Part shown: piece after piece, positions 6,952 through 61,894 of the stretch | Position numbering within the stretch: position 1 is the first letter of the stretch | How the letters are laid out: each line of letters starts with the position of its first letter | Virus record (IMG/VR): IMGVR_UViG_3300042889_001503 | Span: 208,438-272,437 of that record | Length of the DNA: 64,000 nucleotides | Strand: one strand, 5' to 3' | Notes under the pieces: generated by a model | The model's database searches: none | Seen by the model: only the letters and a program-made list of their open reading frames with translations | Told to the model about the DNA's origin: nothing | Made by a program: the position numbers and the translations under genes

Positions 6952-7443
6952 ATGGAAATGGACTTTACAAAATACTCGGTAGAAGAATTAAGAGAACTTC
7001 AAAACAAGATTGGTTATTATTTACAAACTCGTAATGATGATTTTGTTTATATCTGTGAGATTAGGTCGTATGGTAAAAATTGGGTGAATAAATACACCAA
7101 TGAACTTGCTGTGAATGATTTGTGTGCTGATTACGATGGTTATGATGGTATCGTGGATGTATATACAACCAATCCGGACGCTAACATTAGTAACTATGGT
7201 GAGGTTAATTACATTAAATCTGAGGACCAATACCGTAAGTGGAAACAGAGTGAGACATTAATCTCTCAGATAAAAAGTGCGGAAGATAAGTTGGCGAAAT
7301 GGAATGATAGAGATAACATCCCATTCCATTCAAGACCAACCTTTGCTCCGATGTGGACAGAACAAGATATCCTTGGGTGGAGAAATGAATTAGAAACAAT
7401 TGAGTGGGATTATGAAGAGCCCGTTTCAATTAAAAAAAAGTGA
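6952..7443 (+). CDS. Hypothetical protein
   Basis: Probable start MEMDFTK after TACTTTTG (6940-6947); track start 6868. Confidence 0.7.
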   Translation: MEMDFTKYSVEELRELQNKIGYYLQTRNDDFVYICEIRSYGKNWVNKYTNELAVNDLCADYDGYDGIVDVYTTNPDANISNYGEVNYIKSEDQYRKWKQSETLISQIKSAEDKLAKWNDRDNIPFHSRPTFAPMWTEQDILGWRNELETIEWDYEEPVSIKKK

Positions 7444-7859
7444 AGACGATTATGATGAATAACGATTCTTATACAGGAAATGAAATGGGTGATAAACCGA
7501 AAGAGTTGACTATGAAAGAGATTAACGAGAAATATGTTAATCGTATTATTGAGTCATTAGAGAATGACAAAGAACTTTGGGTGAGAGAAGTCATGTGTGG
7601 AATGGGAGGATGTTTTGTGGATTATTATAGTCCAAAATATTCAACTAAAGATGGAGGAACTTTACAATTCTCGGACAAGGAATATGCCAAAGCTCATATT
7701 GATGGGAGACCTGCTTGGGAAATTCCATTTTGGATGTATCATAACCCATTTAGTGACAAGTCAAGAAGATTAAGAAGAGCGATGGATGTAATGAGAGTAT
7801 ATCTTATTAACAAGAAAGACAACGAGTATAAAGATAAATTAAGTAAATCAATTGAATAA
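7440..7859 (+). CDS. Hypothetical protein
   Basis: 139 aa ORF overlapping neighbours. Confidence 0.65.
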   Translation: MKTIMMNNDSYTGNEMGDKPKELTMKEINEKYVNRIIESLENDKELWVREVMCGMGGCFVDYYSPKYSTKDGGTLQFSDKEYAKAHIDGRPAWEIPFWMYHNPFSDKSRRLRRAMDVMRVYLINKKDNEYKDKLSKSIE

Positions 7860-8061
7860 TATGTGGGTAGAAACTAAAATAGTGATGGATGGTGGTTACC
7901 AAGAGGCAATCATCTCACAAAATGAAACACAAAACGCAATTGTCTTAAATATTGTTGAGGTTGAAGAACCGGGTTCGGCAAGATTGTATATGTCTTATGA
8001 TGAGGCGTTAAGATTGGCAAATGAGTTAATAGATTTTGTAAGTAAAAACAGAGGGAAATAA
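7852..8061 (+). CDS. Hypothetical protein
   Basis: 69 aa, translationally coupled. Confidence 0.65.
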   Translation: MNNMWVETKIVMDGGYQEAIISQNETQNAIVLNIVEVEEPGSARLYMSYDEALRLANELIDFVSKNRGK

Positions 8062-8669
8062 TGGAAGGATACATTTATTTAGGGGAATATTACGATGTGA
8101 TTGGTAGACCTGTTGCTTTACCGGATAAAAAAATAGGGTTTTCTAAAGTTCCGGTTTCAAGAGAATATCAACTCAATAGAACTAAGTCTCCGATTGGATA
8201 TAGAGTTCTTGAAGTTTATAAGGTTGATAATATGAATAAGGTTGAAAAAATGTTACATTCCATATTGGATAGCCGTAGGTTAGTTGGGGAGTGGTTTAGA
8301 GATGATGAAGATACATTAACCGGTGACTTTATTAACTTTATGATTTCTTATGGTGGTGTAGTATCAAGTATTAGTGAGATTAAAGAATCAAAAGAATTTT
8401 TAGAATCTACTCCTGATACAAGATTAATTGATTTGGCAAACAAATTATGTAACGATACAATATTAATTAGAACTTATTTAGGTAATGACTATGAAGTGAC
8501 CCTTACAACGAAAGGCATGTTGGTATTCAATGGGGAGTCATTTGACACACCAAATAAGTTATACAATAATGGGGTGGTAAAGTTTGTTAAAGGTGTTAAA
8601 GGTGGTAGTGGAACAAATAACCTATCACAATTTAAATTTAAATTAACGGGTGAGCGTTTAAAAGATTAA
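8061..8669 (+). CDS. T5orf172/GIY-YIG-superfamily domain protein
   Basis: GYIYL...KKIGFSK...VEKMLHSIL...RLVGEWF. Confidence 0.7.
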   Translation: MEGYIYLGEYYDVIGRPVALPDKKIGFSKVPVSREYQLNRTKSPIGYRVLEVYKVDNMNKVEKMLHSILDSRRLVGEWFRDDEDTLTGDFINFMISYGGVVSSISEIKESKEFLESTPDTRLIDLANKLCNDTILIRTYLGNDYEVTLTTKGMLVFNGESFDTPNKLYNNGVVKFVKGVKGGSGTNNLSQFKFKLTGERLKD

Positions 8670-8671
8670 TT

Positions 8672-9007
8672 ATGGAAAAGAAATTAGGAAAGATTGAGTC
8701 AATAAGTTTTGGTCTTGGTGGTTATCAGGGAGCAATGATTGGTCTTCACGTTACATTAGGTAATGGAAGTTGGGGTGTTGGAGATTCAAGAGCCAATTGG
8801 GATGCGGAGCAAATAAAGTGGTCCGAACATAGCAAATGGACAGAAGAAGATAGAGACGGTTGGTATGCTGAAATTATGAGATATGTTTCATCGTTACTAA
8901 AAGACGCTAAGGTTAACTCAGTTGACCAATTAAAAGGAAAACCGGTTGAGGTAACCTTTGATGGTAATATGTTAAAGAGTTGGAGAATACTAACTGAAGT
9001 ATTATAG
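8672..9007 (+). CDS. Hypothetical phage protein
   Basis: 111 aa ORF. Confidence 0.7.
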   Translation: MEKKLGKIESISFGLGGYQGAMIGLHVTLGNGSWGVGDSRANWDAEQIKWSEHSKWTEEDRDGWYAEIMRYVSSLLKDAKVNSVDQLKGKPVEVTFDGNMLKSWRILTEVL

Positions 9008-28537: not shown

Positions 28538-28798
28538 ATGAAAAAGTTGGTATTCAAATATTTTGACACATTTTGTTACGGGGAACTAATTCCGGATGAG
28601 GGTGACTCTAATTGGATGAAACCATTTATTGAGTATAATGCGTTTGGATATTCAATTAACGAAAACTATCTATTTTATAATGGAGGTTTGATGGACGATG
28701 TTATGGGGATGTTTAGTGTCGGTAAAGCTGACTTTAGAGAATATTTAATGGAGTGGTTTCAAAATAGATATAATTTACCGGTATCAAATGTTGTGTAA
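28538..28798 (+). CDS. Hypothetical protein (WF family, no leader)
   Basis: LMEWFQNRYNLPV; TATCTTTG at 28526-28533. Confidence 0.7.
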   Translation: MKKLVFKYFDTFCYGELIPDEGDSNWMKPFIEYNAFGYSINENYLFYNGGLMDDVMGMFSVGKADFREYLMEWFQNRYNLPVSNVV

Positions 28799-31634: not shown

Positions 31635-32002
31635 AAATAGTGATTACAGAATCTCAATACAACAAACTATTCAACGACTTAGACGATAGTTTTTTTGGAA
31701 CCGTAGAAGAAACCAACTTTGTTGTTGGTGACTTACTGACTGAGGCGGAATATCAGGGACGCAAAGTTCAACTTGGTAAAATTATGCAAGGGGATGTTAA
31801 AAAATTCAAAGTGTATGTTAAGAACGACAAAGGAAATGTTGTTAAGGTTAACTTTGGTTTTGGTGGTAAATCGGCAAAAGGAAAACGAATGGTTATCAAA
31901 AAAAATAATCCGGCTAGAAGAAAATCTTTTAGAGCAAGAATGAATTGTGATAGTCCGGGACCAAGATGGAAAGCAAGATACTGGGCTTGTAGAACTTGGT
32001 AA
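31631..32002 (+). CDS. Leader-bearing basic phage protein (DUF6321-like)
   Basis: MKIVITESQ...LTEAEYQGRKV...KVNFG...RRKSFRARMNC...ARYWAC. Confidence 0.65.
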   Translation: MKIVITESQYNKLFNDLDDSFFGTVEETNFVVGDLLTEAEYQGRKVQLGKIMQGDVKKFKVYVKNDKGNVVKVNFGFGGKSAKGKRMVIKKNNPARRKSFRARMNCDSPGPRWKARYWACRTW

Positions 32003-32003
32003 T

Positions 32004-32375
32004 ATGGATGTAAAAATTAAATACGATAAATTGTTTTCCACGTTTGAAAAAATGATGGAAGAGTATTCCAATTTGGACCACACCGAAAAATCTTACGATT
32101 CTTGGATTCAGGAAAAGGGTGGTTATATTGATTTGGATGTTATAAATTTTTATCGCGATATTGAAGAAGATTATGAAGATGATGATTGGGTTATGCAATA
32201 TCAAGATAGTTCAGGTGATGAAGGAAGAGATGAAGATTTACCAATATTAAGATATGGTGATGGTTATTCATTTAAATCTGAACAGTCAATGTTTGGGCAT
32301 CACTTTGATGAGTTATTAAAAGATTGGTTTGAAAAAGTATACGGGTATAATGTTAAAACAATTGAAAGGATATAA
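32004..32375 (+). CDS. Hypothetical protein (WF family)
   Basis: MDVKIK; LKDWFEKVYGYNV; track start 31947. Confidence 0.7.
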   Translation: MDVKIKYDKLFSTFEKMMEEYSNLDHTEKSYDSWIQEKGGYIDLDVINFYRDIEEDYEDDDWVMQYQDSSGDEGRDEDLPILRYGDGYSFKSEQSMFGHHFDELLKDWFEKVYGYNVKTIERI

Positions 32376-32913: not shown

Positions 32914-32941
32914 AACCCCATCCTAAACGGTGGGGTTTTTT
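32914..32941. terminator. Terminator between convergent genes
   Basis: AACCCCA/TGGGGTT plus T-run. Confidence 0.75.
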
Positions 32942-33645
32942 AATTTATCTTCCATCATCGAATATACCTTCTCCTTTAATTTTTTGGTGTCCTTAATTGT
33001 TAACCCGTCAACACTAACCTCATCTAAAAATACAACACGATTTATTCCCGGAGTTAACCCAAACAAACTTGAATGATGAAGACGTTTATCTGTGTCCAAC
33101 AATAACATTGGTTTAATAGGTGTTTGAGTTTCAATAGCAATTCTAAATGCTCCGTCAAAGAAATCACATAACGTATCATCCGTATCATTAAACTTACCTT
33201 CCGGAAATAAAAATATTGAAATCCCTTTTGAAATTTCTGATTTTAATTTTCTGATACTCTCAACACGACTACTTGACTCAGTCCGTTTAATTGTTATTAC
33301 ACAGGTTTTCCAAATGTAACCCAACAAAGGTATTGATGATGTTTCGTGTTGACCCAAAACTCTAAAAGGTTGATTGATACTCAACGCAATTGATGGTGCG
33401 TCCATATAGGATTTATGGTTTGAGATAAAAACATATTGTTTATTCTTATCGTGAGGTTTGTCGTAAATTATTTTGTGACGAATACCAATTAAGAAGAACC
33501 AAGATTTTGCCCACAGGTTAACCACCCGGTAATTCATATTGGTCCCTTTCATACCAAAAAATGAAAATACAAATATGATTGGTGATATCAATAACATTAT
33601 TAAGACAAATGTTATTAACGAATAAATTGTAAATATTTTTTTCAT
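32923..33645 (-). CDS. plsC: 1-acyl-sn-glycerol-3-phosphate acyltransferase (LPLAT)
   Basis: SNHKSYMD (HxxxxD), FPEG, N-terminal TM; probable start MKKIF. Confidence 0.85.
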   Translation of the reverse strand: MKKIFTIYSLITFVLIMLLISPIIFVFSFFGMKGTNMNYRVVNLWAKSWFFLIGIRHKIIYDKPHDKNKQYVFISNHKSYMDAPSIALSINQPFRVLGQHETSSIPLLGYIWKTCVITIKRTESSSRVESIRKLKSEISKGISIFLFPEGKFNDTDDTLCDFFDGAFRIAIETQTPIKPMLLLDTDKRLHHSSLFGLTPGINRVVFLDEVSVDGLTIKDTKKLKEKVYSMMEDKLKNPTV

Positions 33646-33646
33646 A

Positions 33647-35080
33647 TCAAATTTGTTTTCCATATTCAATAACGGTTTCAGTTTTTTCTTCTTGACGGTG
33701 ACCGCCAACATAAGTTCCACATACTTTATTACCATTATCAATCACGTCCTCAATTTGAGTCTCCCATCTAATATATAGAAGACTTGTTGATGGGTCGGTA
33801 TAATTTCCTGACATAGTTTTTTTTACACCGTTTTTAATCACACCATTAATTCTTCCTTTGTGGTGATATACATCTTCATAGGTTTCTTTAACACCTTCAC
33901 TAATAACGTCCTTTATTAAATCTGTTGGGACATCCCAATCACATTCAATGGTGTCCGTAATACCTTTGTTAATAATCTTATCAATTATGTTTTCACCAAC
34001 ATATTGACGTGGGGTGGAACTTCTCACACCATCTCTAACGACAAGATGTGATTCTAAAATAAGTTCTCTACCGCTAGTATCTAAAATCAGAAGAGCATTC
34101 TTTTTTTGTTTTGTTTCTTTTACACCATTTTTAAGTGCGTCTTCCATTTTATTATCAAAAAATTTCATCACATCAACGTGACTAGTTTCTTTAACACCAA
34201 TATCAATCACTTTATAAGCATCAACCCTAAGTTTTGACATATGATATTTAGTTTCCTTCACACCCTTATCAATTACTTCTTCACATAAAAATTGGAATTT
34301 ATCTCCCGATTTGGTTTCTTTCACACCTTCTTTAATGACACCATTAATCCAACTTTGATTTTCGTACTCACTATATTGAGTGTCTCTCACACCATTTTGA
34401 ATAACATCTTTAACGTCACCTCTAAATCCTTTATACTCGTAAATTTCTTTCACCCCATTTTGAATGATGTCGTTAATATCTCCAAGTTTTTTATCTGAAC
34501 TTCCGTTATCGGTATCTTTAACAAGGAATGGTCGATGGAAATGGAGGGGGTCAGTTTTCTTCACACCATTTTCAAGAGTACCCTCAACTGATAAGGTTCT
34601 TTTATCGCCCCAATAATCGGTGTTCTTCACCCCATTTTGAATGATATCGTCAACCCCAAGAAGAGTACGTCGTAATGTGCTATTAGTTTCTTTCACCCCA
34701 TTCTCAATGGTATCGTCAACGGACCAACACGTTTTCATATGAGCCATCTTAGTTTTATTTACACCATTTTCAAGAGTATCTTCAAATTGTTGTTTTCTAT
34801 CCCGGGCATCTCTAAAGAGTGTAACATAAGTTAACTCTTTATTTATAATATTGTCTTCCACCCATTTTGTGATGAGGTGTTGATTCTGAACGCAATCCAA
34901 CGAAGCGTAAGCAAAAACACTTTTAAAAAAGTTGTAATTATACCACAGAGTTTTATTCTCAGTTAATTCAATCACCCATTGTTTAGTCTCAGTAAAGATT
35001 AACCAAGTGGAATCATTGTGGGTGTAGGTATCCACACCTTCGGTAAATTCGTTGATTAGTTTATGTATAATTTTTTCCAT
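33647..35080 (-). CDS. Tandem-repeat protein, about 15-16 repeats of roughly 22 aa
   Basis: Recurring D(I/V)IxNGVK(E/K)T scaffold with variable linkers; N-terminal WF-like domain; TATCTTTG on minus strand at 35085-35092. Confidence 0.85.
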   Translation of the reverse strand: MEKIIHKLINEFTEGVDTYTHNDSTWLIFTETKQWVIELTENKTLWYNYNFFKSVFAYASLDCVQNQHLITKWVEDNIINKELTYVTLFRDARDRKQQFEDTLENGVNKTKMAHMKTCWSVDDTIENGVKETNSTLRRTLLGVDDIIQNGVKNTDYWGDKRTLSVEGTLENGVKKTDPLHFHRPFLVKDTDNGSSDKKLGDINDIIQNGVKEIYEYKGFRGDVKDVIQNGVRDTQYSEYENQSWINGVIKEGVKETKSGDKFQFLCEEVIDKGVKETKYHMSKLRVDAYKVIDIGVKETSHVDVMKFFDNKMEDALKNGVKETKQKKNALLILDTSGRELILESHLVVRDGVRSSTPRQYVGENIIDKIINKGITDTIECDWDVPTDLIKDVISEGVKETYEDVYHHKGRINGVIKNGVKKTMSGNYTDPSTSLLYIRWETQIEDVIDNGNKVCGTYVGGHRQEEKTETVIEYGKQI

Positions 35081-35136
35081 ACAACAAAGATACTAAAACT
35101 ATTTCTTATTATCTAATAATAATTTATATTTTTACA

Positions 35137-35651: not shown

Positions 35652-35695
35652 TTCTAACCTCCGGTTAAACGGGGGTTTTTTAATTTAATGAAAAT

Positions 35696-36190: not shown

Positions 36191-36203
36191 GATATTTATT
36201 GAT

Positions 36204-36596
36204 ATGAAAATTATAATAACTGAGAGTAAATTAAATCAAGCGGTCATTGATTACCTGAACGAGACATACGATACCAATAACATTGGTTGGACATATGGTA
36301 TTGATGATTGGGGTAATGAAGTGGACTACGCAATTGAATTTTATACTGACGATTATGATGAAGGTGATAATACTTTATTTAGATGGTATGGTGAAGATTA
36401 TTGGGATAGTGATGATGCTGATGGTTGGGGTGAACCATATCGTAGCGAATTAAAAAGTAAATCTCCTTTGTTAATATTTGAAAATGATGATGTTTTTATT
36501 GCTTTAAACGGTTATTTTGGTGATAAATGGAAACAACCATTTATTGATTGGTTTTGGGATAAATTCCACGTACCGGTTAAGACAATCAATAAGTAG
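36204..36596 (+). CDS. Leader-bearing acidic protein (WF family)
   Basis: MKIIITESK after TATTTAT 36193-36199; FIDWFWDKFHVPV. Confidence 0.75.
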   Translation: MKIIITESKLNQAVIDYLNETYDTNNIGWTYGIDDWGNEVDYAIEFYTDDYDEGDNTLFRWYGEDYWDSDDADGWGEPYRSELKSKSPLLIFENDDVFIALNGYFGDKWKQPFIDWFWDKFHVPVKTINK

Positions 36597-38578: not shown

Positions 38579-39313
38579 TTATCGTTTTAAGATTTCTTTA
38601 GAGTAAAATTCATCAAACCCAACCATCATTTCTGTCATAGATTTGTTTGTCTCTAATCCAACGATGTTATCAATTAAACCAAACTTTTTCGCCTCATCTG
38701 AGTTGAACCATTTGTCATTTCTTGATGACTCATACATCTCGTCAAATGTTTTCCCACAATTCTCCGCCAAGATTTTGAATAACATATAGTTATACTTCTC
38801 CGCCTCCAATTGGTTGATACGAGTGTCCTGAACATTTCCTTGTGTTCCGTGAGATACCATATGTGTCATAATTTTTGAGAAGATTAATGAACTTCTTTTT
38901 CCTTTGGCTCCTGACGATACTAATACGGAACCCATAGACGCACACATCCCAACATTTAATGTTGCAACATCCGGTTTGATGTAGTTCATAGTATCTCGGA
39001 TTCCAAGACCTGACAATACGGAACCTCCCGGAGTGTCAAGATACATACTGATATCTTTTTTATCTGTGGTTTCCAAGAAGATAAGTTGAGCTTGTATGAT
39101 AGATGCCATCTGACTCTCAACCGGTCCGGAAACCCAAATAATTCTGTCCATCATAAGTCGGGAGAAAATATCAAGTTGAGTTGCTCTCATCTCTCTTTCT
39201 TCCAAAATGTATGGAGTAACACTCTCGATGTGTTTTTGGTAGTAATCCAAATTAAGTCCTGAAATACCTCTGTCGCTCATCGCGAACTTTTGAAACTCTT
39301 TTCCGTAATTCAT
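38579..39313 (-). CDS. clpP: ATP-dependent Clp protease proteolytic subunit
   Basis: DIFSRLMMDRII, YLDTPGGSV, GMCASMGS (catalytic Ser), IMTH, AKKFGLID. Confidence 0.95.
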   Translation of the reverse strand: MNYGKEFQKFAMSDRGISGLNLDYYQKHIESVTPYILEEREMRATQLDIFSRLMMDRIIWVSGPVESQMASIIQAQLIFLETTDKKDISMYLDTPGGSVLSGLGIRDTMNYIKPDVATLNVGMCASMGSVLVSSGAKGKRSSLIFSKIMTHMVSHGTQGNVQDTRINQLEAEKYNYMLFKILAENCGKTFDEMYESSRNDKWFNSDEAKKFGLIDNIVGLETNKSMTEMMVGFDEFYSKEILKR

Positions 39314-44536: not shown

Positions 44537-44710
44537 ATGGGATTTATAGATAATCTTTACGCTGTGTATGAAAAAGTACCAGCACACGGGAGTAAAGAAC
44601 ATAATGTAATCTTGGCTCCTTTCAAAACTAAAGAAGAAGCAGAACAAAGCAGAATTAAATATGGTTATAACACCGATAATTATTACGTAGATATTTTGAA
44701 ATATGAATAA
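44537..44710 (+). CDS. Small hypothetical protein
   Basis: Manual ORF of 57 aa MGFIDNLYAVY. Confidence 0.5.
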   Translation: MGFIDNLYAVYEKVPAHGSKEHNVILAPFKTKEEAEQSRIKYGYNTDNYYVDILKYE

Positions 44711-45974
44711 ATTAGACAAAACATATCAGGACTTACTCCAAGACATTCTTGACAACGGAGTAGTAAAACAAGACAGAACAGGGACGGGAACAATCTCGGT
44801 ATTCGGAAGACAAATCAGACATAAAATGTCAGAAGGATTCCCATTACTTACAACCAAAAAAATGCCATTCAAAACAATCGTAACAGAACTTCTTTGGTTC
44901 TTAAGAGGTGATACCAACATTAAGTTTTTGGTTGATAATGGATGTAATATTTGGAATGGTGATGCTTATAAGAACTACATAAATAACCCAGCTTACAAAG
45001 CTGAATCTGTTGCCGATTTAATGGGTTCACAAGCAGGTCAATTGGTAAAATGCTCAACACAAGAAGAGTTCATCAACAAAATAAAGACAGATGATGAGTT
45101 TGCTAAGAAGTGGGGTGAATTGGGTCCAATTTACGGTAAGCAATGGAGAAATTGGGGGAGGTTTGAGTATGAAGGTTTCACCCAAGAAGGTAGCGAAACA
45201 TTAAATAACATAGATGTAAATTGGAAAATACCAACAGACCAAATCCAAAACCTAATCAACGACCTTAAAACAAATCCAGACTCAAGACGATTGATGGTTA
45301 ATGCTTGGAATGTTGGAGAACTGGACCAAATGGTTCTTCCACCTTGTCATTATGGATTTCAAGTTTATACAAGAGAGTTGAGTAATGAAGAACGATTAGA
45401 TTGGATGAGAGGTAATAAGTCTAAAGTAATCTTACCAATGAGAGACCCTAATATTGAGTTTTCTATGGATGAATGGTTTAGACCATACGGAGTTCCTAAA
45501 CGAGCAATCTCTTTAATGTGGAATCAACGTTCAGTAGATACATTCTTAGGATTACCATTCAACATTGCTTCTTATGGATTGTTATTAGAAATAATTGCAA
45601 AAGAAGTTAATATGGTTCCTGACCAGTTGATTGGGAATCTTGGTGATGTTCATTTATATTCAAATCATATTGAACAAGCCAAAGAACAAATTGGAAGAGA
45701 ATATACTCACCAAGAAAGAGATGAATTGTTACAACAAGAGATGGGTAGAGAAAGATATAATAAGGCGGTTGATGAATTGATGCCGTTCGGTGGGGGATTA
45801 AGTGGATATTATGAATTTTATAAAATTCCATATAGAACAAGAGAACCTTATCGATTACCAACATTAGTAATGGTTACTAACCCCGATTTAAAGTTTGATG
45901 AATATGTTTATGATAATTTAAAACTTGTAAACTATCAATCACATCCAACCATTAAAGCACCTTTAAGTAATTAA
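44703..45974 (+). CDS. thyA: Thymidylate synthase (ThyA type) with large in-frame insertions
   Basis: DRTGTGT, FPLLTTKK, ELLWFL, LGPIYG.QWR, MVLPPCH, QRSVD.FLG.PFN, GDVHLYSNH, IKAPLSN. Confidence 0.95.
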   Translation: MNKLDKTYQDLLQDILDNGVVKQDRTGTGTISVFGRQIRHKMSEGFPLLTTKKMPFKTIVTELLWFLRGDTNIKFLVDNGCNIWNGDAYKNYINNPAYKAESVADLMGSQAGQLVKCSTQEEFINKIKTDDEFAKKWGELGPIYGKQWRNWGRFEYEGFTQEGSETLNNIDVNWKIPTDQIQNLINDLKTNPDSRRLMVNAWNVGELDQMVLPPCHYGFQVYTRELSNEERLDWMRGNKSKVILPMRDPNIEFSMDEWFRPYGVPKRAISLMWNQRSVDTFLGLPFNIASYGLLLEIIAKEVNMVPDQLIGNLGDVHLYSNHIEQAKEQIGREYTHQERDELLQQEMGRERYNKAVDELMPFGGGLSGYYEFYKIPYRTREPYRLPTLVMVTNPDLKFDEYVYDNLKLVNYQSHPTIKAPLSN

Positions 45975-53480: not shown

Positions 53481-54308
53481 ATGAAACAAACAAAAACTTA
53501 CCACGAATTGGTACAAAAAATGAGAACGTTCTTTGTAAACAAGAACTTTATTGAGGTTCCATCTCAATCACGATTATCTATTTTAGCTGCTTGCGAAAAT
53601 CCACATTCAGTTAAAACATTTGAATATGGAGGTGAAATTTGGCCGTTACCACAGACAGGACAAATGTGGTTGGAATATGAATTATTGAAAAATCCTGAAT
53701 GGGACGGTGTATTCTGTATATCAACATCATACAGAGAAGAGAAAAATCCAATCCCGGGTCGTCACGAATTAATCTTCCCAATGTTTGAATTTGAATCAAA
53801 AGGAACGATGGAAGATTTGGTTGCATTAGAACTTGAATTGTTACAATTCTTAGGATTTGATTCACCGGTTGAGGTAAACTATGAAGATGTGTGTAAAGAA
53901 TACGGTGGTGTATCCATTTTAGAGGACGAACACGAATCAAGAATGTGGAAAGAAAAAAGTGAGGTTATTTCATTACAAAACTTCCCAATTAGAACAAACC
54001 CATTTTGGAATATGAAACATAATTCAGATAACATCTTCAATAAGGTTGACGTAATCCTTTTTGGGCAAGAAACAATTGGTTCAGCTGAGAGAAGTTGTGA
54101 TGTTGTTAAGATGAGAGAGATGTTCTATACCATAGAAAATGGTGGTTACTCTCAGAAACTATTTGAATTATTTGGGAAAGATAGAGTTGAGAAAGAATTG
54201 GAAGAATTCTTATCTTTGGACTTCTTCCCACGTTTTGGTGCGGGGATTGGTCTAACAAGATTGGCGAGAGCTTACAATATAAATAAAGAATTAGTTGAGA
54301 CATATTAA
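53481..54308 (+). CDS. Class II aaRS catalytic-domain-only protein (AsnRS paralogue, asparagine synthetase AS-AR type)
   Basis: LPQTGQMWLE, STSYREE...RH...FPMFEFE (motif 2), ETIGSAERS, GAGIGLTRL (motif 3); no anticodon-binding domain. Confidence 0.8.
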   Translation: MKQTKTYHELVQKMRTFFVNKNFIEVPSQSRLSILAACENPHSVKTFEYGGEIWPLPQTGQMWLEYELLKNPEWDGVFCISTSYREEKNPIPGRHELIFPMFEFESKGTMEDLVALELELLQFLGFDSPVEVNYEDVCKEYGGVSILEDEHESRMWKEKSEVISLQNFPIRTNPFWNMKHNSDNIFNKVDVILFGQETIGSAERSCDVVKMREMFYTIENGGYSQKLFELFGKDRVEKELEEFLSLDFFPRFGAGIGLTRLARAYNINKELVETY

Positions 54309-55201: not shown

Positions 55202-56323
55202 ATGAAAAACCTATCAAAAGAAGAATTATTAAGCCGTCTTGAGGCAATTAACAGAAGTAATGCTATTATTTATTTCGATTTATCGGGAATTATATTAGGT
55301 GTTAATGACATTTTTTTGGTGGCAATGGGGTATGGAATCGGTAATCACGATGAACTTATTGGTAAACACCATAGTACTTTTGTATGTGAAGAATATGCAA
55401 AGTCACCTGAATATGAAAAATTTTGGGACATATTAAGAAGTGGTAAGTACTACCAGGGAGAATTTGAAAGGAGAAGAAAAGATAGAAGTCTTATAAATCT
55501 TCAAGCGACTTATAATCCTATTTTTGATGATAGTGGTAAGATTACTAAAATAATGAAAATCGCTACTGACATTACGTCAATTGTTGATAGCAAGAAACAA
55601 ATAGACGCAATTAACCGAAGTACTGCTCTTATTAATTTTAATACAGATGGATTTATATTAGATGTAAATTCTATATTTTTAGAAACTATGGGGTATAAAC
55701 CCAACGAAAAAAATAATTTAATAGGGAAACATCACAGTGTTTTTGTAAGTTACGAGTATTCAAAGTCCGATGAGTATATTAAGTTTTGGGAAAATCTAAG
55801 AAAGGGTAAGTTTTTTGATGGAATATTTGAAAGAAGAAAAGTAGATGGTTCTATTGTTTATTTACAGGCATCTTATAATCCTGTGGTTGACAGTAAAGGA
55901 AATATTACTGAAGTAGTTAAAATTGCGACAGATATTACTGAGTCAGTAAATAATAAGAAAAAAATAAATGAACTTACGACTAATTTGACAATTGAGTTGG
56001 AAAACTCTCAAAAACTTAAACACTCAATTGAATTAGAAAAAAATGCCGCTCTGAATGATTTAGATGTAGTATTGAAAAAGAGTCAAAATGAGTTAATAAA
56101 AATAATTGTTAAATGTGCATTGGCTGTTATAGTTGGTGTTGGTATTGTGACAACTATGTTATATTGGGTGGCTATTGTGACAAATCAAGATACACAAATT
56201 ATTGGTTCAACTTGGTCAAATATGTTTAGTGTATTATTAACTAACGCATTTTCAATCGTTGGTACAATTATGGGAATTAAATACGCCACGCAGGATGGTA
56301 GTAATAAACCCTCAAGTAATTAA
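55202..56323 (+). CDS. Tandem PAS/PAC sensor fused to coiled coil and two C-terminal TM helices, no output domain
   Basis: Two AINRS...IGKHHS.FV...FW..LR.GK...F.RR.......LQA.YNP..D..G.I....KIATDIT repeats; TATTTAT at 55165-55171. Confidence 0.85.
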   Translation: MKNLSKEELLSRLEAINRSNAIIYFDLSGIILGVNDIFLVAMGYGIGNHDELIGKHHSTFVCEEYAKSPEYEKFWDILRSGKYYQGEFERRRKDRSLINLQATYNPIFDDSGKITKIMKIATDITSIVDSKKQIDAINRSTALINFNTDGFILDVNSIFLETMGYKPNEKNNLIGKHHSVFVSYEYSKSDEYIKFWENLRKGKFFDGIFERRKVDGSIVYLQASYNPVVDSKGNITEVVKIATDITESVNNKKKINELTTNLTIELENSQKLKHSIELEKNAALNDLDVVLKKSQNELIKIIVKCALAVIVGVGIVTTMLYWVAIVTNQDTQIIGSTWSNMFSVLLTNAFSIVGTIMGIKYATQDGSNKPSSN

Positions 56324-60025: not shown

Positions 60026-61894
60026 ATGGGAAAAATTATTGGAATTGACTTAGGAACAACTAACTCGTGTGTCTCTGTAATGGAGGGTAACGAACCGGTT
60101 GTAATAGCAAATTCAGAAGGTAAAAGAACAACACCTTCAATCATCGGTTTCATCAACGAAGGAGAAAGAAAAGTTGGTGACCCGGCAAAAAGACAGGCGG
60201 TAACCAACCCGACTAAAACAATATCATCAATTAAACGATTTATGGGTTCTACCTATGACGAGAGTAAAAACGAAATTGGGAAAGTTCCTTACTCTGTTGT
60301 AAACGAAGGTTCTCAACCAAGAGTTCAGATTGACGATAGAAAATACTCACCACAAGAATTGTCGGCAATCATCTTACAAAAGATGAAACAAACTGCCGAA
60401 GATTATTTAGGTGAATCAGTAACTGATGCGGTAATCACCGTCCCAGCTTACTTTAACGATGCCCAACGTCAGGCTACAAAAGAGGCGGGTGAAATTGCCG
60501 GATTAAATGTTCGTCGTATTATCAACGAACCAACCGCGGCGGCTCTTGCGTATGGACTTGACAAAAAAGGTGATAGTAAAATTGTTGTGTTTGACTGTGG
60601 AGGGGGAACTCACGACGTGTCTATTCTTGACTTAGGTGGTGGTGTATTTGAGGTATTATCTACCGATGGAGACACACATTTAGGAGGGGACGACTTTGAC
60701 AGAGTCATTATTGATTTCTTGGTTGAAGAATTTAAGAACGATAATGGTGGTTTAGACATCTCAAAAGATGCTATGGCATTACAAAGGTTAAGAGAAGGTG
60801 CTGAGAAAGCGAAGGTTGAATTATCTTCATCACCTCAGACAGAAATCAACTTACCTTATTTAAGTGCTGATGCTACCGGACCAAAACACTTGGTAAAAAC
60901 ATTAACAAGAGCGAAGTTTGAACAACTTGCGGCTGAGTTAATCAAAAGAACCATTGACCCTTGTAAAACGGCATTGAAAAACGCGAAACTTAAGGTTTCC
61001 GATATTGATGAGATTATCCTTGTTGGTGGAACAACAAGAATCCCGGCAATACAAGATGCGGTTAAGAAGTTCTTTGGTAAAGAACCATCAAAAGGTGTTA
61101 ATCCGGATGAGGTAGTTGCGTTAGGTGCGGCTATTCAAGGAGGTGTATTGGCTGGTGATGTGAAAGACGTGTTGTTATTAGACGTAACACCACTTTCATT
61201 AGGTATTGAAACAATGGGTGGTATTTTAACACGACTTATTGAGGCAAATACCACAATCCCAACCAAAAAGTCACAAGTGTTCTCAACAGCTGTTGATAAT
61301 CAACCTTCTGTAGAGATTCACGTCTTACAAGGAGAGAGACCAATGGCAAAAGACAACAGAACGATGGGTAGATTCCATTTAGATGGTTTACCACCATCAA
61401 TGAGAGGTGTTCCTCAAATTGAGGTAATCTTTGATATTGACGCGAATGGTATCATCAATGTATCTGCAGTTGACAAATCAACAAACAAAACACAATCAAT
61501 TAGAATTGAGGGTTCAACGGGATTATCTCAAGAGGATATTGAAAGAATGAAGGCTGAAGCTGAAGAAAATGCTGAAGCGGACAAAAAACTTAAAGAGGAT
61601 GTGGACACATTAAACTCCGCTGACAACCTGATATTCCAAACAGGTAAATCTTTAACGGATTTAGAGGATAAGATTTCTGAAGAACAAAAAACAGAAATAA
61701 CAACTCTTCTTGATACCTTGAAAGAATCTCATTCTAATAAAGATGTGGAAAATGTTAAAACGATTATGGAAGAACTTACCCAAAAGTTTCAAACCATCAC
61801 ACAGGAATTATACAATAGTGTAAATGAGAGTGAGACTCCGGAATCAGATATTAACGCTTCTGACGTAGAGTTTGAAGAAGTTAAACCTGAGTAA
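60026..61894 (+). CDS. dnaK: Hsp70 chaperone DnaK
   Basis: [57 protein letters not shown]. Confidence 0.98.

What the first reader, a model, noticed from the sequence alone, without database searches (positions are those of the whole stretch)
33647..35080. Repeat protein with constant scaffold and hypervariable inserts (CRISPR-like 66-nt period, but translated)
Seen: after an N-terminal WF-like domain come about 15-16 units. Each has a conserved core of about 10 aa (D-x-I-x-N-G-V-K-E-T) and a completely variable segment of about 12 aa (KMAHMKTCWSV, NSTLRRTLLGV, DYWGDKRTLSV, YEYKGFRGDV, QYSEYENQSWI and so on), with a few longer inserts. The modal period is 22 aa = 66 nt, and DNA cores such as TTTCACACCATTTT recur. 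It has a host-type promoter, so it is probably expressed early. Inference: a modular binder (solenoid with variable surface loops) diversified by recombination between cores, perhaps to inhibit polymorphic host defence proteins. The repeat-plus-unique-spacer layout also raises the possibility that inserts are acquired.
Basis: partly seen in the sequence, partly recalled or inferred. Interest (0 to 1): 0.65.

Follow-up and report, generated by a model that had tools for sequence, protein, structure and literature searches.

The report
Phage protein with shuffled peptide-cassette array
A large aquatic phage carries a gene whose protein strings about 15 different short peptide "cassettes" between copies of one constant 12-residue motif. 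Near-identical phages carry different cassette sets, so the array is a real, rapidly reshuffled protein family of unknown function.

Summary
Window 33647..35080 (minus strand) is a 477-aa ORF with a folded 80-aa N-terminal domain and 15 units with a modal period of 22 aa. Each unit has a constant 12-aa motif, [VI][ED][DE][VTI][IL]x[ND]GVKET, and a segment of about 10 aa that differs from unit to unit.

The genome is a 272-kb T4-like phage, probably of Bacteroidota. The family is large (over 1,478 word-search hits; 528 clusters at 50% identity). It was found almost only on viral or metagenomic contigs and has no confident Pfam, NCBIfam, PHROG, PADLOC or PDB match.

The "variable" segments are not free-running. 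They are discrete cassettes from a shared vocabulary, each conserved across homologues (pN/pS about 0.2) and almost never repeated within one protein. Phages with 90-96% identical flanks differ by unit-sized gains, losses and swaps that join at the constant motifs. Among 102 pairs with at least 97% identical N-domains, only one pair has the same architecture.

A Bacteroidetes-type promoter, TTTG-N20-TAnnTTTG-N4-ATG, is conserved upstream. Neither AlphaFold2 nor ESMFold2 gives a confident fold for the array, so the solenoid idea has no support. Spacer-like acquisition also has no support.

Best reading: an early-expressed display of short peptide motifs, reshuffled by recombination. The function is inferred, not shown.

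The parts
33647..35080 (-). Whole gene (477 aa plus stop), protein P0001
   Evidence: The start MEKIIHKL is conserved in homologues. The identical protein is on record in the metagenome protein collection (P0002).
34841..35080 (-). N-terminal globular domain, aa 1-80 (helix, four strands, two helices). The end of its last helix (WVEDNIINK...) is the template of the repeated constant motif ('core 0').
   Evidence: AlphaFold2 pLDDT above 90 for residues 1-80. No clear PDB match: Foldseek best E 0.33, VIA best Z 5.0. It matches only small viral hypothetical proteins in BFVD (E 1e-5) and the ESM Atlas (TM 0.62-0.67, rmsd 1.7-1.9 over 77 residues). The profile finds 528 clusters, and the domain lies at the N-terminus in nearly all of the 150 listed. 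Register of core 0.
33716..34789 (-). Cassette array, about aa 98-455. It has 15 constant motifs ([VI][ED][DE][VTI][IL]x[ND]GVKET) alternating with 14 different cassettes. Most are about 10 aa; three are 20-25 aa.
   Evidence: Low-confidence structure, except a short hairpin at aa 332-341.
33650..33754 (-). Conserved C-terminal tail, aa 443-477 (last core NGNKVC, then GTYVGGHRQ...VIEYG)
   Evidence: Invariant and nearly invariant columns G450-G474 in alignments A1 and A2. More distant relatives (L009, L012) end differently.
35085..35092 (-). TATCTTTG, a Bacteroidetes-type -7 promoter element (TAnnTTTG), 4 nt upstream of the ATG
   Evidence: Sequence. The same element at the same distance is found in L004, L005, L016, L023 and L025-L027. 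The class TAnnTTTG-N3-5-ATG occurs 37 times in the genome against 20.4 +/- 3.2 in shuffles, and 12 of these precede ORFs of at least 40 codons.
35113..35116 (-). -33-like element. It reads TTAG here and TTTG in most relatives, 20 nt upstream of the -7 element.
   Evidence: My reading of the printed sequences.
32923..33645 (-). Co-oriented downstream PlsC-type acyltransferase. It is probably in the same transcription unit. It is kept only in close relatives, so it is not an obligatory partner.
   Evidence: PF01553, E 8.6e-19. It is present downstream in L025-L028 and the P0006 contig and absent next to the distant homologues. The exact start codon was not determined.

Best explanation
SHOWN. 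This is a real protein-coding gene of a 272-kb T4-like phage. The protein has three parts:
(a) an 80-aa globular N-terminal domain that belongs to a phage-only family of small proteins;
(b) an array in which a constant 12-aa motif alternates with short peptide cassettes; the motif copies the last two turns and cap of the N-domain's final helix, plus VKET;
(c) a short conserved C-terminal tail.

The cassettes come from a family-wide vocabulary. I found 253 clusters among 120 homologues, and 117 of them recur. Each cassette type is conserved in sequence, is under purifying selection, and occurs at most once per protein in nearly all cases. The arrays change by gain, loss and replacement of whole units, with junctions in the constant motifs. 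This fits homologous or unequal recombination between co-infecting phage genomes. As a result, almost every phage variant carries a different, roughly collinear subset.

INFERRED. The gene is read by the host RNA polymerase from a Bacteroidetes-type promoter, probably early in infection. The array is a flexible or weakly structured chain that displays many different short peptide motifs, each selected for its own interaction. The protein would then be a multivalent hub or decoy for host (or phage) proteins, with a repertoire retuned by recombination, plausibly in host takeover or counter-defence. The constant motif would serve both as a structural spacer (short capped helix) and as the recombination substrate.
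For: Gene and repeat.
Phage identity: Gp23 capsid protein and S77 prohead protease, in an IMG/VR record of 91% estimated completeness.
Family size and restriction: over 1,478 hits; 22 loci on viral contigs of 4.7-318 kb, ten of them over 80 kb; 528 clusters at 50% identity. The only hit among 185,579 species genomes is a phage-like contig in a Pseudarcicella MAG.
Cassette vocabulary and uniqueness: 1,261 units fall into 253 clusters, with 11 within-protein duplicates.
Conservation: pN/pS is about 0.2 in shared cassettes, similar to the N-domain.
Turnover: flanks are 90-96% identical yet cassettes are replaced. Indels are unit-sized. For pairs with at least 97% identical N-domains the mean Jaccard index is 0.35 and only 1 of 102 pairs has an identical architecture. 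Two different architectures come from one sample.
Order: 93% consistent, with 65 of 263 cassette pairs seen in both orders.
No silent cassette store in the genome and no reverse transcriptase.
Promoter.
Low-confidence fold of the array by two predictors and no fixed hydrophobic pattern in the variable positions.
Bacteroidota host context: PMC12619734.
Against: Low pLDDT may reflect a poor alignment, because shuffled cassettes cannot be aligned column-wise, rather than true disorder. The array is 33% hydrophobic and sits on the order/disorder boundary by charge and hydropathy (my calculation). The pN/pS estimate is biased downward because cassettes were paired only if at least 60% identical. 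Early timing is inferred from a promoter motif only. No interaction partner is known, and no cassette was matched to any known motif.
Confidence: 0.4

Rival explanations
1. Folded solenoid binder. Each 22-aa unit is one coil of a beta- or alpha/beta-solenoid. The constant motif forms the core and the cassettes are surface loops that bind polymorphic targets.
For: The 22-aa period is regular. Four conserved hydrophobic positions and an Asn-Gly pair occur per unit. Discrete longer units of 32 and 37-39 aa could be loop insertions. Tail length scales with core number (r = 0.92).
Against: AlphaFold2 with 60 homologues gives pLDDT 30-40 and no secondary structure across the array, while folding the N-domain well. 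ESMFold2 gives pLDDT below 50. All conserved hydrophobic positions lie within a 9-residue window, and the other 10-13 residues have no pattern. There is no Pfam repeat family match (LRR and others) at E below 0.1. The motif aligns with the end of a helix in the N-domain model.
Confidence: 0.2
2. Polyprotein or multi-core peptide precursor. The constant motifs are processing sites, for example V-K-E|T read as an [LIV]-x-E site of the phage's T4-type prohead protease, or a site for a host or ClpP-linked protease. The protein would be cut into about 15 different peptides of about 22 aa, serving as head-internal or injected peptides, or as signalling or toxic peptides.
For: The layout of constant flanks around variable cores matches multi-core precursors such as cyanobactin PatE (my knowledge). 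The array has no confidently predicted fold. The phage encodes an S77 prohead protease, and a ClpP gene lies 3-5 kb away in both close and distant relatives. T4 gp21 cuts after Glu in L/I-x-E (my knowledge).
Against: The conserved promoter is host-type rather than the late TATAAATA type used near head genes. The gene lies far from the head module (about 242 kb versus 28-33 kb). The N-terminus is an 80-aa folded domain with stand-alone paralogues, not a short capsid-targeting or leader peptide. No maturation enzymes were seen in the neighbours scanned against Pfam. Twelve conserved residues are far more than a cleavage site needs.
Confidence: 0.12
3. Virion fibre or whisker, analogous to fibritin. 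An N-terminal attachment domain would be followed by a segmented trimeric rod of variable length and a small C-terminal trimerisation domain.
For: The size (477 aa) and three-part layout resemble T4 fibritin (my knowledge). Unit gain and loss is common in fibres. Monomer predictors often fail on trimeric fibres.
Against: No heptad pattern and no Pfam fibre domains. The promoter is host-type. The gene lies in an accessory region of small genes, on the opposite strand. The N-domain family consists mostly of tiny stand-alone proteins. The trimer prediction gave no verdict and is not evidence either way.
Confidence: 0.05
4. An ordinary old repeat protein whose units simply diverged. The apparent shuffling would reflect only lineage-specific deletions, with no adaptive meaning.
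For: Order is 93% collinear. Cassettes are under purifying selection. Cassette sub-families indicate duplication and divergence.
Against: Architectures differ between phages with at least 97% identical N-domains and 90-96% identical flanks, and within one sample. Sixty-five cassette pairs occur in both orders. The vocabulary (117 recurring types) far exceeds any single array (at most 21). In distant pairs, shared cassettes have lower synonymous divergence than the N-domain, which suggests exchange between lineages.
Confidence: 0.15

Closest known systems
Multi-core RiPP precursors (e.g. cyanobactin PatE)
   Same: Conserved flanking sequences alternate with differing short cores in one translated precursor, and the cores are exchanged between alleles.
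   Different: No maturation protease, cyclase or recognition-element gene was seen in the neighbours scanned against Pfam. There are 15 units behind an 80-aa folded domain. The flanks are conserved at protein level, not nucleotide level. Processing is untested.
Tandem-repeat-generated disordered regions in Borg elements (PMC9879509)
   Same: A large extrachromosomal or viral genome carries in-frame repeats that evolve fast and give low-complexity or disordered protein segments proposed to carry short motifs.
   Different: According to that paper's abstract, Borg repeats are recently formed tandem direct DNA repeats. Here the DNA repeat is degenerate (TRF negative), every unit carries a different conserved cassette, and the family is old and widespread.
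Modular recognition arrays (C2H2 zinc fingers, TALE repeats, lamprey VLR leucine-rich-repeat cassettes)
   Same: A constant scaffold with variable residues per unit. Arrays change by unit gain, loss and swap. The repertoire is combinatorial.
   Different: No metal ligands. No Pfam match. No confident fold. Variation is between genomes in a population, not somatic, and there is no donor cassette store in the genome.
T4 fibritin (gpwac)
   Same: T4-like phage. Similar length. An N-terminal domain, a segmented middle with Gly-containing breaks and a small conserved C-terminus.
   Different: No coiled-coil heptads, no fibritin Pfam match, a host-type promoter and a non-structural neighbourhood.
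CRISPR arrays
   Same: A repeat/unique-segment layout with a period of about 66 nt.
   Different: The array is translated and under purifying selection at the protein level. The DNA repeats are only 63% identical. The 'spacers' are shared orthologous cassettes across hundreds of homologues. They have no matches elsewhere in the genome.

Membership tests
CRISPR array | Near-identical direct DNA repeats separated by unique non-coding spacers | tested here: not met
   TRF finds no tandem repeat in the gene. Cores are 63% identical at nt level and no exact copy of the quoted core exists. The region is one conserved ORF.
CRISPR array | Spacers derived from foreign or other DNA (acquisition) | tested here: not met
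   The variable segments match nothing else in the 272-kb genome beyond chance words of 10-14 nt. Across homologues they are conserved cassettes with pN/pS about 0.2. Host genomes were not searched.
Leucine-rich repeat and other Pfam solenoid repeat families | Match to a repeat-family profile | tested here: not met
   Pfam gives 0 families at E below 0.1 for P0001. Ten long homologues give only weak scattered hits, and a short Dodecin-helix match (28 bits in P0093, above that model's whole-protein cut-off, but no single stretch passed). NCBIfam gives 0.
Leucine-rich repeat and other Pfam solenoid repeat families | Confidently predicted or solved solenoid fold | tested here: inconclusive
   AlphaFold2 gives pLDDT 30-40 for the array and ESMFold2 below 50. 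The alignment of shuffled cassettes is poor, so a fold cannot be excluded.
RiPP multi-core precursor | Adjacent maturation enzymes (protease, cyclase or recognition-element protein) | tested here: not met
   The larger neighbours scanned against Pfam are a PlsC-type acyltransferase, ClpP (3.5 kb away), a weak GDSL-like hit and small unknown proteins. Not every small ORF was scanned. The acyltransferase is absent from distant relatives. The weak Foldseek resemblance of the N-domain to recognition-element proteins (TbiB1, E 0.5) is not significant.
RiPP multi-core precursor | Proteolytic release of core peptides | not testable with these tools
   Needs mass spectrometry of infected cells.
Diversity-generating retroelement target | Reverse transcriptase and template repeat in the genome | tested here: not met
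   No RVT_1 match in the genome, while the controls matched. Variation is by whole units, not point mutagenesis.
T4 fibritin / phage fibre | Fibre domain profile, late promoter, structural-module location | tested here: not met
   No Pfam hit. The conserved promoter is TAnnTTTG, not TATAAATA. The gene lies about 210 kb from the capsid gene.
T4 fibritin / phage fibre | Homotrimer | tested here: inconclusive
   Three copies of aa 300-477 were folded and the tool gave no verdict.
Phage small-protein family sharing the N-terminal domain (unnamed) | Same fold or profile as the N-domain | tested here: met
   Profile search: 528 clusters, with the domain N-terminal in nearly all of the 150 listed. 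BFVD hits at E 1e-5 to 0.03 to uncultured-phage proteins. Atlas clusters at TM 0.62-0.67, 96-100% viral. One paralogue in the same genome (window 28538..28798, E 7e-6).

The most novel reading that the evidence does not exclude
The protein is a phage-encoded combinatorial library of short linear peptide motifs. Each cassette would bind or mimic a different host protein, for example components of strain-specific defence systems. Recombination at the constant motifs would let the phage population reassort this repertoire quickly. That would be a bacterial-virus counterpart of the motif-rich disordered hub proteins of eukaryotic viruses, with a cassette exchange mechanism built into the repeat.
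Probability: 0.25. Interest if true: 0.85.

Novelty: new variant of a known kind. Interest (0 to 1): 0.62.

Why it matters
If the cassettes are individual interaction motifs, this family would show phages evolving host-interaction repertoires in a new way. They would reassort a shared vocabulary of about 10-residue peptides inside one early protein, rather than swapping whole genes or mutating a receptor-binding tip.

It would also supply more than 100 natural, selection-tested peptides to screen against proteins of freshwater and marine Bacteroidota, whose phage defence and takeover biology is little known.

Even without a function, the family is large, is unannotated in every library searched, and appears confined to a lineage of large aquatic phages. 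It is a clear case of unit-level recombination visible between near-identical genomes.

Tried and rejected
Searches that found nothing:
- Cultured-phage collection: blastn of the 3-kb region and tblastn of the protein gave no match. The tool may leave out records of the window's own genome.
- PHROGs gave only E above 0.02. PADLOC gave one weak hit (E 0.0027) with no qualifying stretch. Sequence search of the PDB gave one weak hit (E 0.035).
- ESM Atlas feature search gave no usable hit.
- tRNA scan of the window gave none.
- The literature search for the motif found nothing relevant.

Tools that gave no usable result:
- Homotrimer test of aa 300-477: no verdict, not evidence either way.

Ideas tested and dropped:
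- Neighbouring small proteins that start MKIIITE and end ...DWF...VKTI might share the N-domain fold. hhalign gives probability 0.3%, so this is not supported. Those two neighbour families are related to each other (95%).
- The acyltransferase as obligatory partner. Rejected, because it is absent next to distant homologues.
- A late promoter. A 7-of-8 TATAAAT motif lies about 40 nt upstream of the ATG in the window but is not conserved in relatives.
- The generic sigma-70 scan is uninformative: 17 sites against 15.8 expected.
- Antisense ORFs inside the gene (e.g. 34292..34498). They recur in relatives only as the mirror image of the repeat.
Full report
WHAT IS THERE

The finding's coordinates are exact, on the minus strand. 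Window 33647..35080 is a 477-aa ORF (protein P0001).

After a first segment of about 100 aa, the motif x-G-V-K-E-T recurs 15 times. The Gly lies at aa 106, 128, 150, 172, 209, 230, 252, 273, 295, 319, 351, 373, 396, 418 and 450. Spacings are 22 (modal), 21-24, 32 and 37 aa.

A six-frame scan of the whole genome finds this motif 11 times in this ORF and only twice elsewhere. The repeat is therefore far beyond chance.

It is a protein repeat rather than a DNA repeat:
- Tandem Repeats Finder reports nothing in the gene.
- The cores are 63% identical at nucleotide level, against 28% for the intervening parts.

THE GENOME

The window is the last 64 kb of a single 272,437-bp IMG/VR virus record with an estimated completeness of 91%.
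- It encodes a T4-type major capsid protein (PF07068, E 2e-65) and a T4-type prohead protease (PF03420).
- It has no NCLDV capsid match (that search also found nothing in its control genomes).
- The window also carries DnaK/Hsp70, thymidylate synthase, a PAS protein, a class-II aminoacyl-tRNA-synthetase-like protein and ClpP.

Large aquatic phages of 200-307 kb, with predicted Bacteroidota hosts and in some cases DnaK, were recently described as 'moraphages' (PMC12619734). I did not test whether this genome belongs to that lineage.

THE FAMILY

- The word-based search gave more than 1,478 hits of 280-784 aa. All are unnamed or 'hypothetical'.
- A profile of the N-terminal domain found 528 clusters at 50% identity among 1.84 billion representatives. 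The domain is N-terminal in nearly all of the 150 listed. Tail length tracks the number of cores (r = 0.92).
- Twenty-two loci lie on IMG/VR viral contigs of 4.7-318 kb, ten of them over 80 kb.
- The only hit among 185,579 species genomes is a short phage-like contig binned into a Pseudarcicella (Bacteroidota) MAG.
- Pfam and NCBIfam give nothing. PHROGs, PADLOC and PDB sequence searches give nothing significant.
- The cultured-phage collection has no match.

ANATOMY

(1) N-terminal domain, residues 1-80. It folds confidently (pLDDT above 90) as helix, four strands and two helices. It has no clear PDB counterpart: Foldseek best E 0.33 and VIA best Z 5.0. It superposes on small viral hypothetical proteins in BFVD (E 1e-5) and in three ESM Atlas clusters of 177-415 members that are 96-100% viral (TM 0.62-0.67, rmsd 1.7-1.9 Å over 77 residues). 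One stand-alone paralogue lies in the same genome at window 28538..28798. Others lie in locus L007.

(2) The constant motif is 12 residues, [VI][ED][DE][VTI][IL]x[ND]GVKET. It carries 1.7-4.3 bits per position, whereas the next 10 positions carry 0.2-0.7 bits. The end of the N-domain's last helix...WVEDNIINK-VKxT, is the same motif in the same register. The array therefore looks like serial copies of that helix end plus cap. I infer that each constant motif forms a short capped helix.

(3) The array itself is modelled at pLDDT 30-40 with no secondary structure, apart from one hairpin at aa 332-341. ESMFold2 also gave pLDDT below 50 for aa 300-477. Across 488 distinct 22-aa units, the variable positions are 23-43% hydrophobic with no fixed pattern.

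(4) A C-terminal tail of about 35 aa is conserved among the closer relatives.

The 'completely variable' segments are variable only within one protein. Across homologues they are discrete cassettes.
- I cut 120 homologues at the cores and obtained 1,261 units. These fall into 253 clusters at 60% identity, and 117 of them recur.
- The commonest clusters appear in 30-67 proteins with near-identical sequence.
- A cassette type almost never occurs twice in one protein: 11 duplicates among 1,261 units.
- Related cassette types exist (for example the KMAHMKTDWSV and KGFKMRTDWSI types). This fits origin by duplication and divergence inside the family.
- Shared cassettes have pN/pS of about 0.2, like the N-domain. 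This estimate is biased downward, because I paired only cassettes that were at least 60% identical.
- The variable DNA has no other copy in the genome. The motif occurs in no other ORF, so there is no silent cassette store. There is no reverse transcriptase.

Spacer-like acquisition, pilin-type cassette donation and DGR mutagenesis are therefore not supported.

TURNOVER

- Contigs whose flanks are 90-96% identical to the window (L025-L028) keep the same neighbours, including the downstream acyltransferase. They differ inside the gene by replacement, loss or gain of whole units, and the alignments break and resume at cores.
- At protein level the gaps are 20, 22, 23, 32, 39 and 59 aa.
- Among 83 full-length homologues, 102 pairs have at least 97% identical N-domains. 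Their mean cassette-set Jaccard index is 0.35, and only one pair has the same architecture.
- Two different architectures (P0006, P0007) come from a single sample, with the same upstream neighbours.
- Order is largely collinear (93% of co-occurring pairs in the majority order), but 65 of 263 pairs are seen in both orders.
- Some relatives carry two tandem genes with non-overlapping cassette sets (L009).

The simplest mechanism is homologous and unequal recombination at the constant motifs between co-infecting relatives. That is an inference from the junction positions.

EXPRESSION SIGNAL

- The generic sigma-70 scan is uninformative: 17 sites against 15.8 expected.
- Immediately upstream of the ATG lies TATCTTTG, which matches the Bacteroidetes -7 element TAnnTTTG (my knowledge of that consensus).
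- The same element at the same 4-nt distance occurs upstream of the homologues in L004, L005, L016, L023 and L025-L027. In most of them a TTTG lies 20 nt further upstream.
- The arrangement TAnnTTTG-N3-5-ATG occurs 37 times in the genome against 20.4 ± 3.2 in shuffles. It precedes a dozen ORFs, including the N-domain paralogue.
- The T4-type late motif TATAAATA lies instead upstream of large structural ORFs.
- The 7-of-8 late-like motif upstream of this gene is not conserved in relatives.

It also agrees with a Bacteroidota host. Early timing remains an inference, and I could not obtain read data.

HOW IT MOST LIKELY WORKS

Shown: the domain layout, the cassette vocabulary, purifying selection on cassettes, unit-wise turnover at the constant motifs, and a conserved host-type promoter.

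Inferred: the array is a flexible chain in which short capped helices space and present many different peptides of about 10 residues, each kept for its own interaction. The protein would be an early multivalent hub or decoy whose repertoire the phage population reassorts. I give this 0.4.

Rivals:
- Folded solenoid with variable loops, 0.2. It is not supported by two predictors, but the alignments are poor.
- Ordinary diverged repeat protein with no adaptive shuffling, 0.15. The rapid turnover argues against it.
- Precursor cleaved at the cores, 0.12. The phage has an S77 protease and a nearby ClpP, but the promoter, location and folded N-domain argue against it.
- Virion fibre, 0.05.

The trimer prediction returned no verdict and counts for nothing.

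COMPARISON WITH KNOWN SYSTEMS

The layout works like multi-core peptide precursors or modular recognition arrays. In its evolutionary behaviour it resembles the fast-evolving in-frame repeats of Borg elements (PMC9879509). It fails the membership tests I could run for CRISPR, Pfam repeat families, RiPP clusters, DGR targets and fibritin (see the membership table). It does belong to an unnamed phage-only family defined by the N-terminal domain.

NOVELTY AND SCORE

The protein family has no annotation in any library searched, and I found no paper describing it. The general kind, a mosaic tandem-repeat protein evolving by recombination, is known. What is unusual is the combination of four things:
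- a constant motif with a large shared vocabulary of conserved, non-redundant cassettes;
- no confidently predicted fold for the array;
- a host-type promoter;
- turnover visible between near-identical phages.

I rate it a new variant of a known kind, with interest 0.62. The most novel reading not excluded is a recombining library of host-targeting peptide motifs, at probability about 0.25.

Noticed in passing
window 38579..39313 (-): A phage-encoded ClpP protease (PF00574, E 3e-52) on the same strand as the repeat gene. A homologue lies within about 3-5 kb of the repeat gene in both close and distant relatives (L004, L009, L011, L012, L015-L017, L020, L022), although on different sides of it.
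   Followed up: partly
window 32923..33645 (-): A PlsC-type acyltransferase with an N-terminal hydrophobic segment lies directly downstream of the repeat gene. It is unusual cargo for a phage. It is kept in close relatives only.
   Followed up: partly
window 36201..36596 (+) and 31947..32375 (+): Two families of small acidic proteins that both end in ...DWF...VKTI. The first begins MKIIITE. They are related to each other (hhalign 95%) but not detectably to the N-domain (0.3%). Their C-terminal VKT(I) resembles the array's VKET core, and this is unexplained. The N-domain paralogue at 28538..28798 ends similarly (...EWFQNRYNLPVSNVV).
   Followed up: partly
whole genome, e.g. G000:C1:1532, 154892; window 3837, 6952, 12367, 28538, 35080: A class of about a dozen genes has TAnnTTTG 3-5 nt before the ATG. 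This is a Bacteroidetes-type promoter implying leaderless or near-leaderless mRNAs. There are 37 sites against 20 expected.
   Followed up: partly
window 32914..32937 and 35656..35677 (+): Two very similar terminator-like hairpins (AACC..GGGGTT followed by TTTTAATTTA). They bracket a 2.7-kb block that holds the minus-strand gene pair and two small plus-strand genes.
   Followed up: no
window 60026..61894, 44703..45974, 55202..56323, 53481..54308: Auxiliary genes: a full-length DnaK/Hsp70 (E 1e-254); a 423-aa thymidylate synthase whose Pfam match is split in two stretches, which suggests an insertion; a double-PAS protein; and a truncated class-II aminoacyl-tRNA-synthetase-like protein.
   Followed up: no
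L009 5977..7287 and 7284..8699 (also L010): Two tandem copies of the repeat gene in a distant relative. They overlap by 4 nt, and the cassette sets I extracted share no member.
   Followed up: partly
L029 (JAGNSI010000088.1, Pseudarcicella MAG): A 10.5-kb contig in a Bacteroidota MAG carries the start of a homologue and a large phage-like gene (57% identical to a 681-aa ORF at G000:C1:4350..6395). It is probably a phage contig binned with its host, which gives a weak host hint.
   Followed up: partly
P0213 (representative library): A 233-aa protein with two tandem copies of the N-domain. The first copy is preceded by an MKYIITENQ... helix like the one that starts the MKIIITE small-protein family. 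This suggests the N-terminal helix is a mobile module.
   Followed up: no
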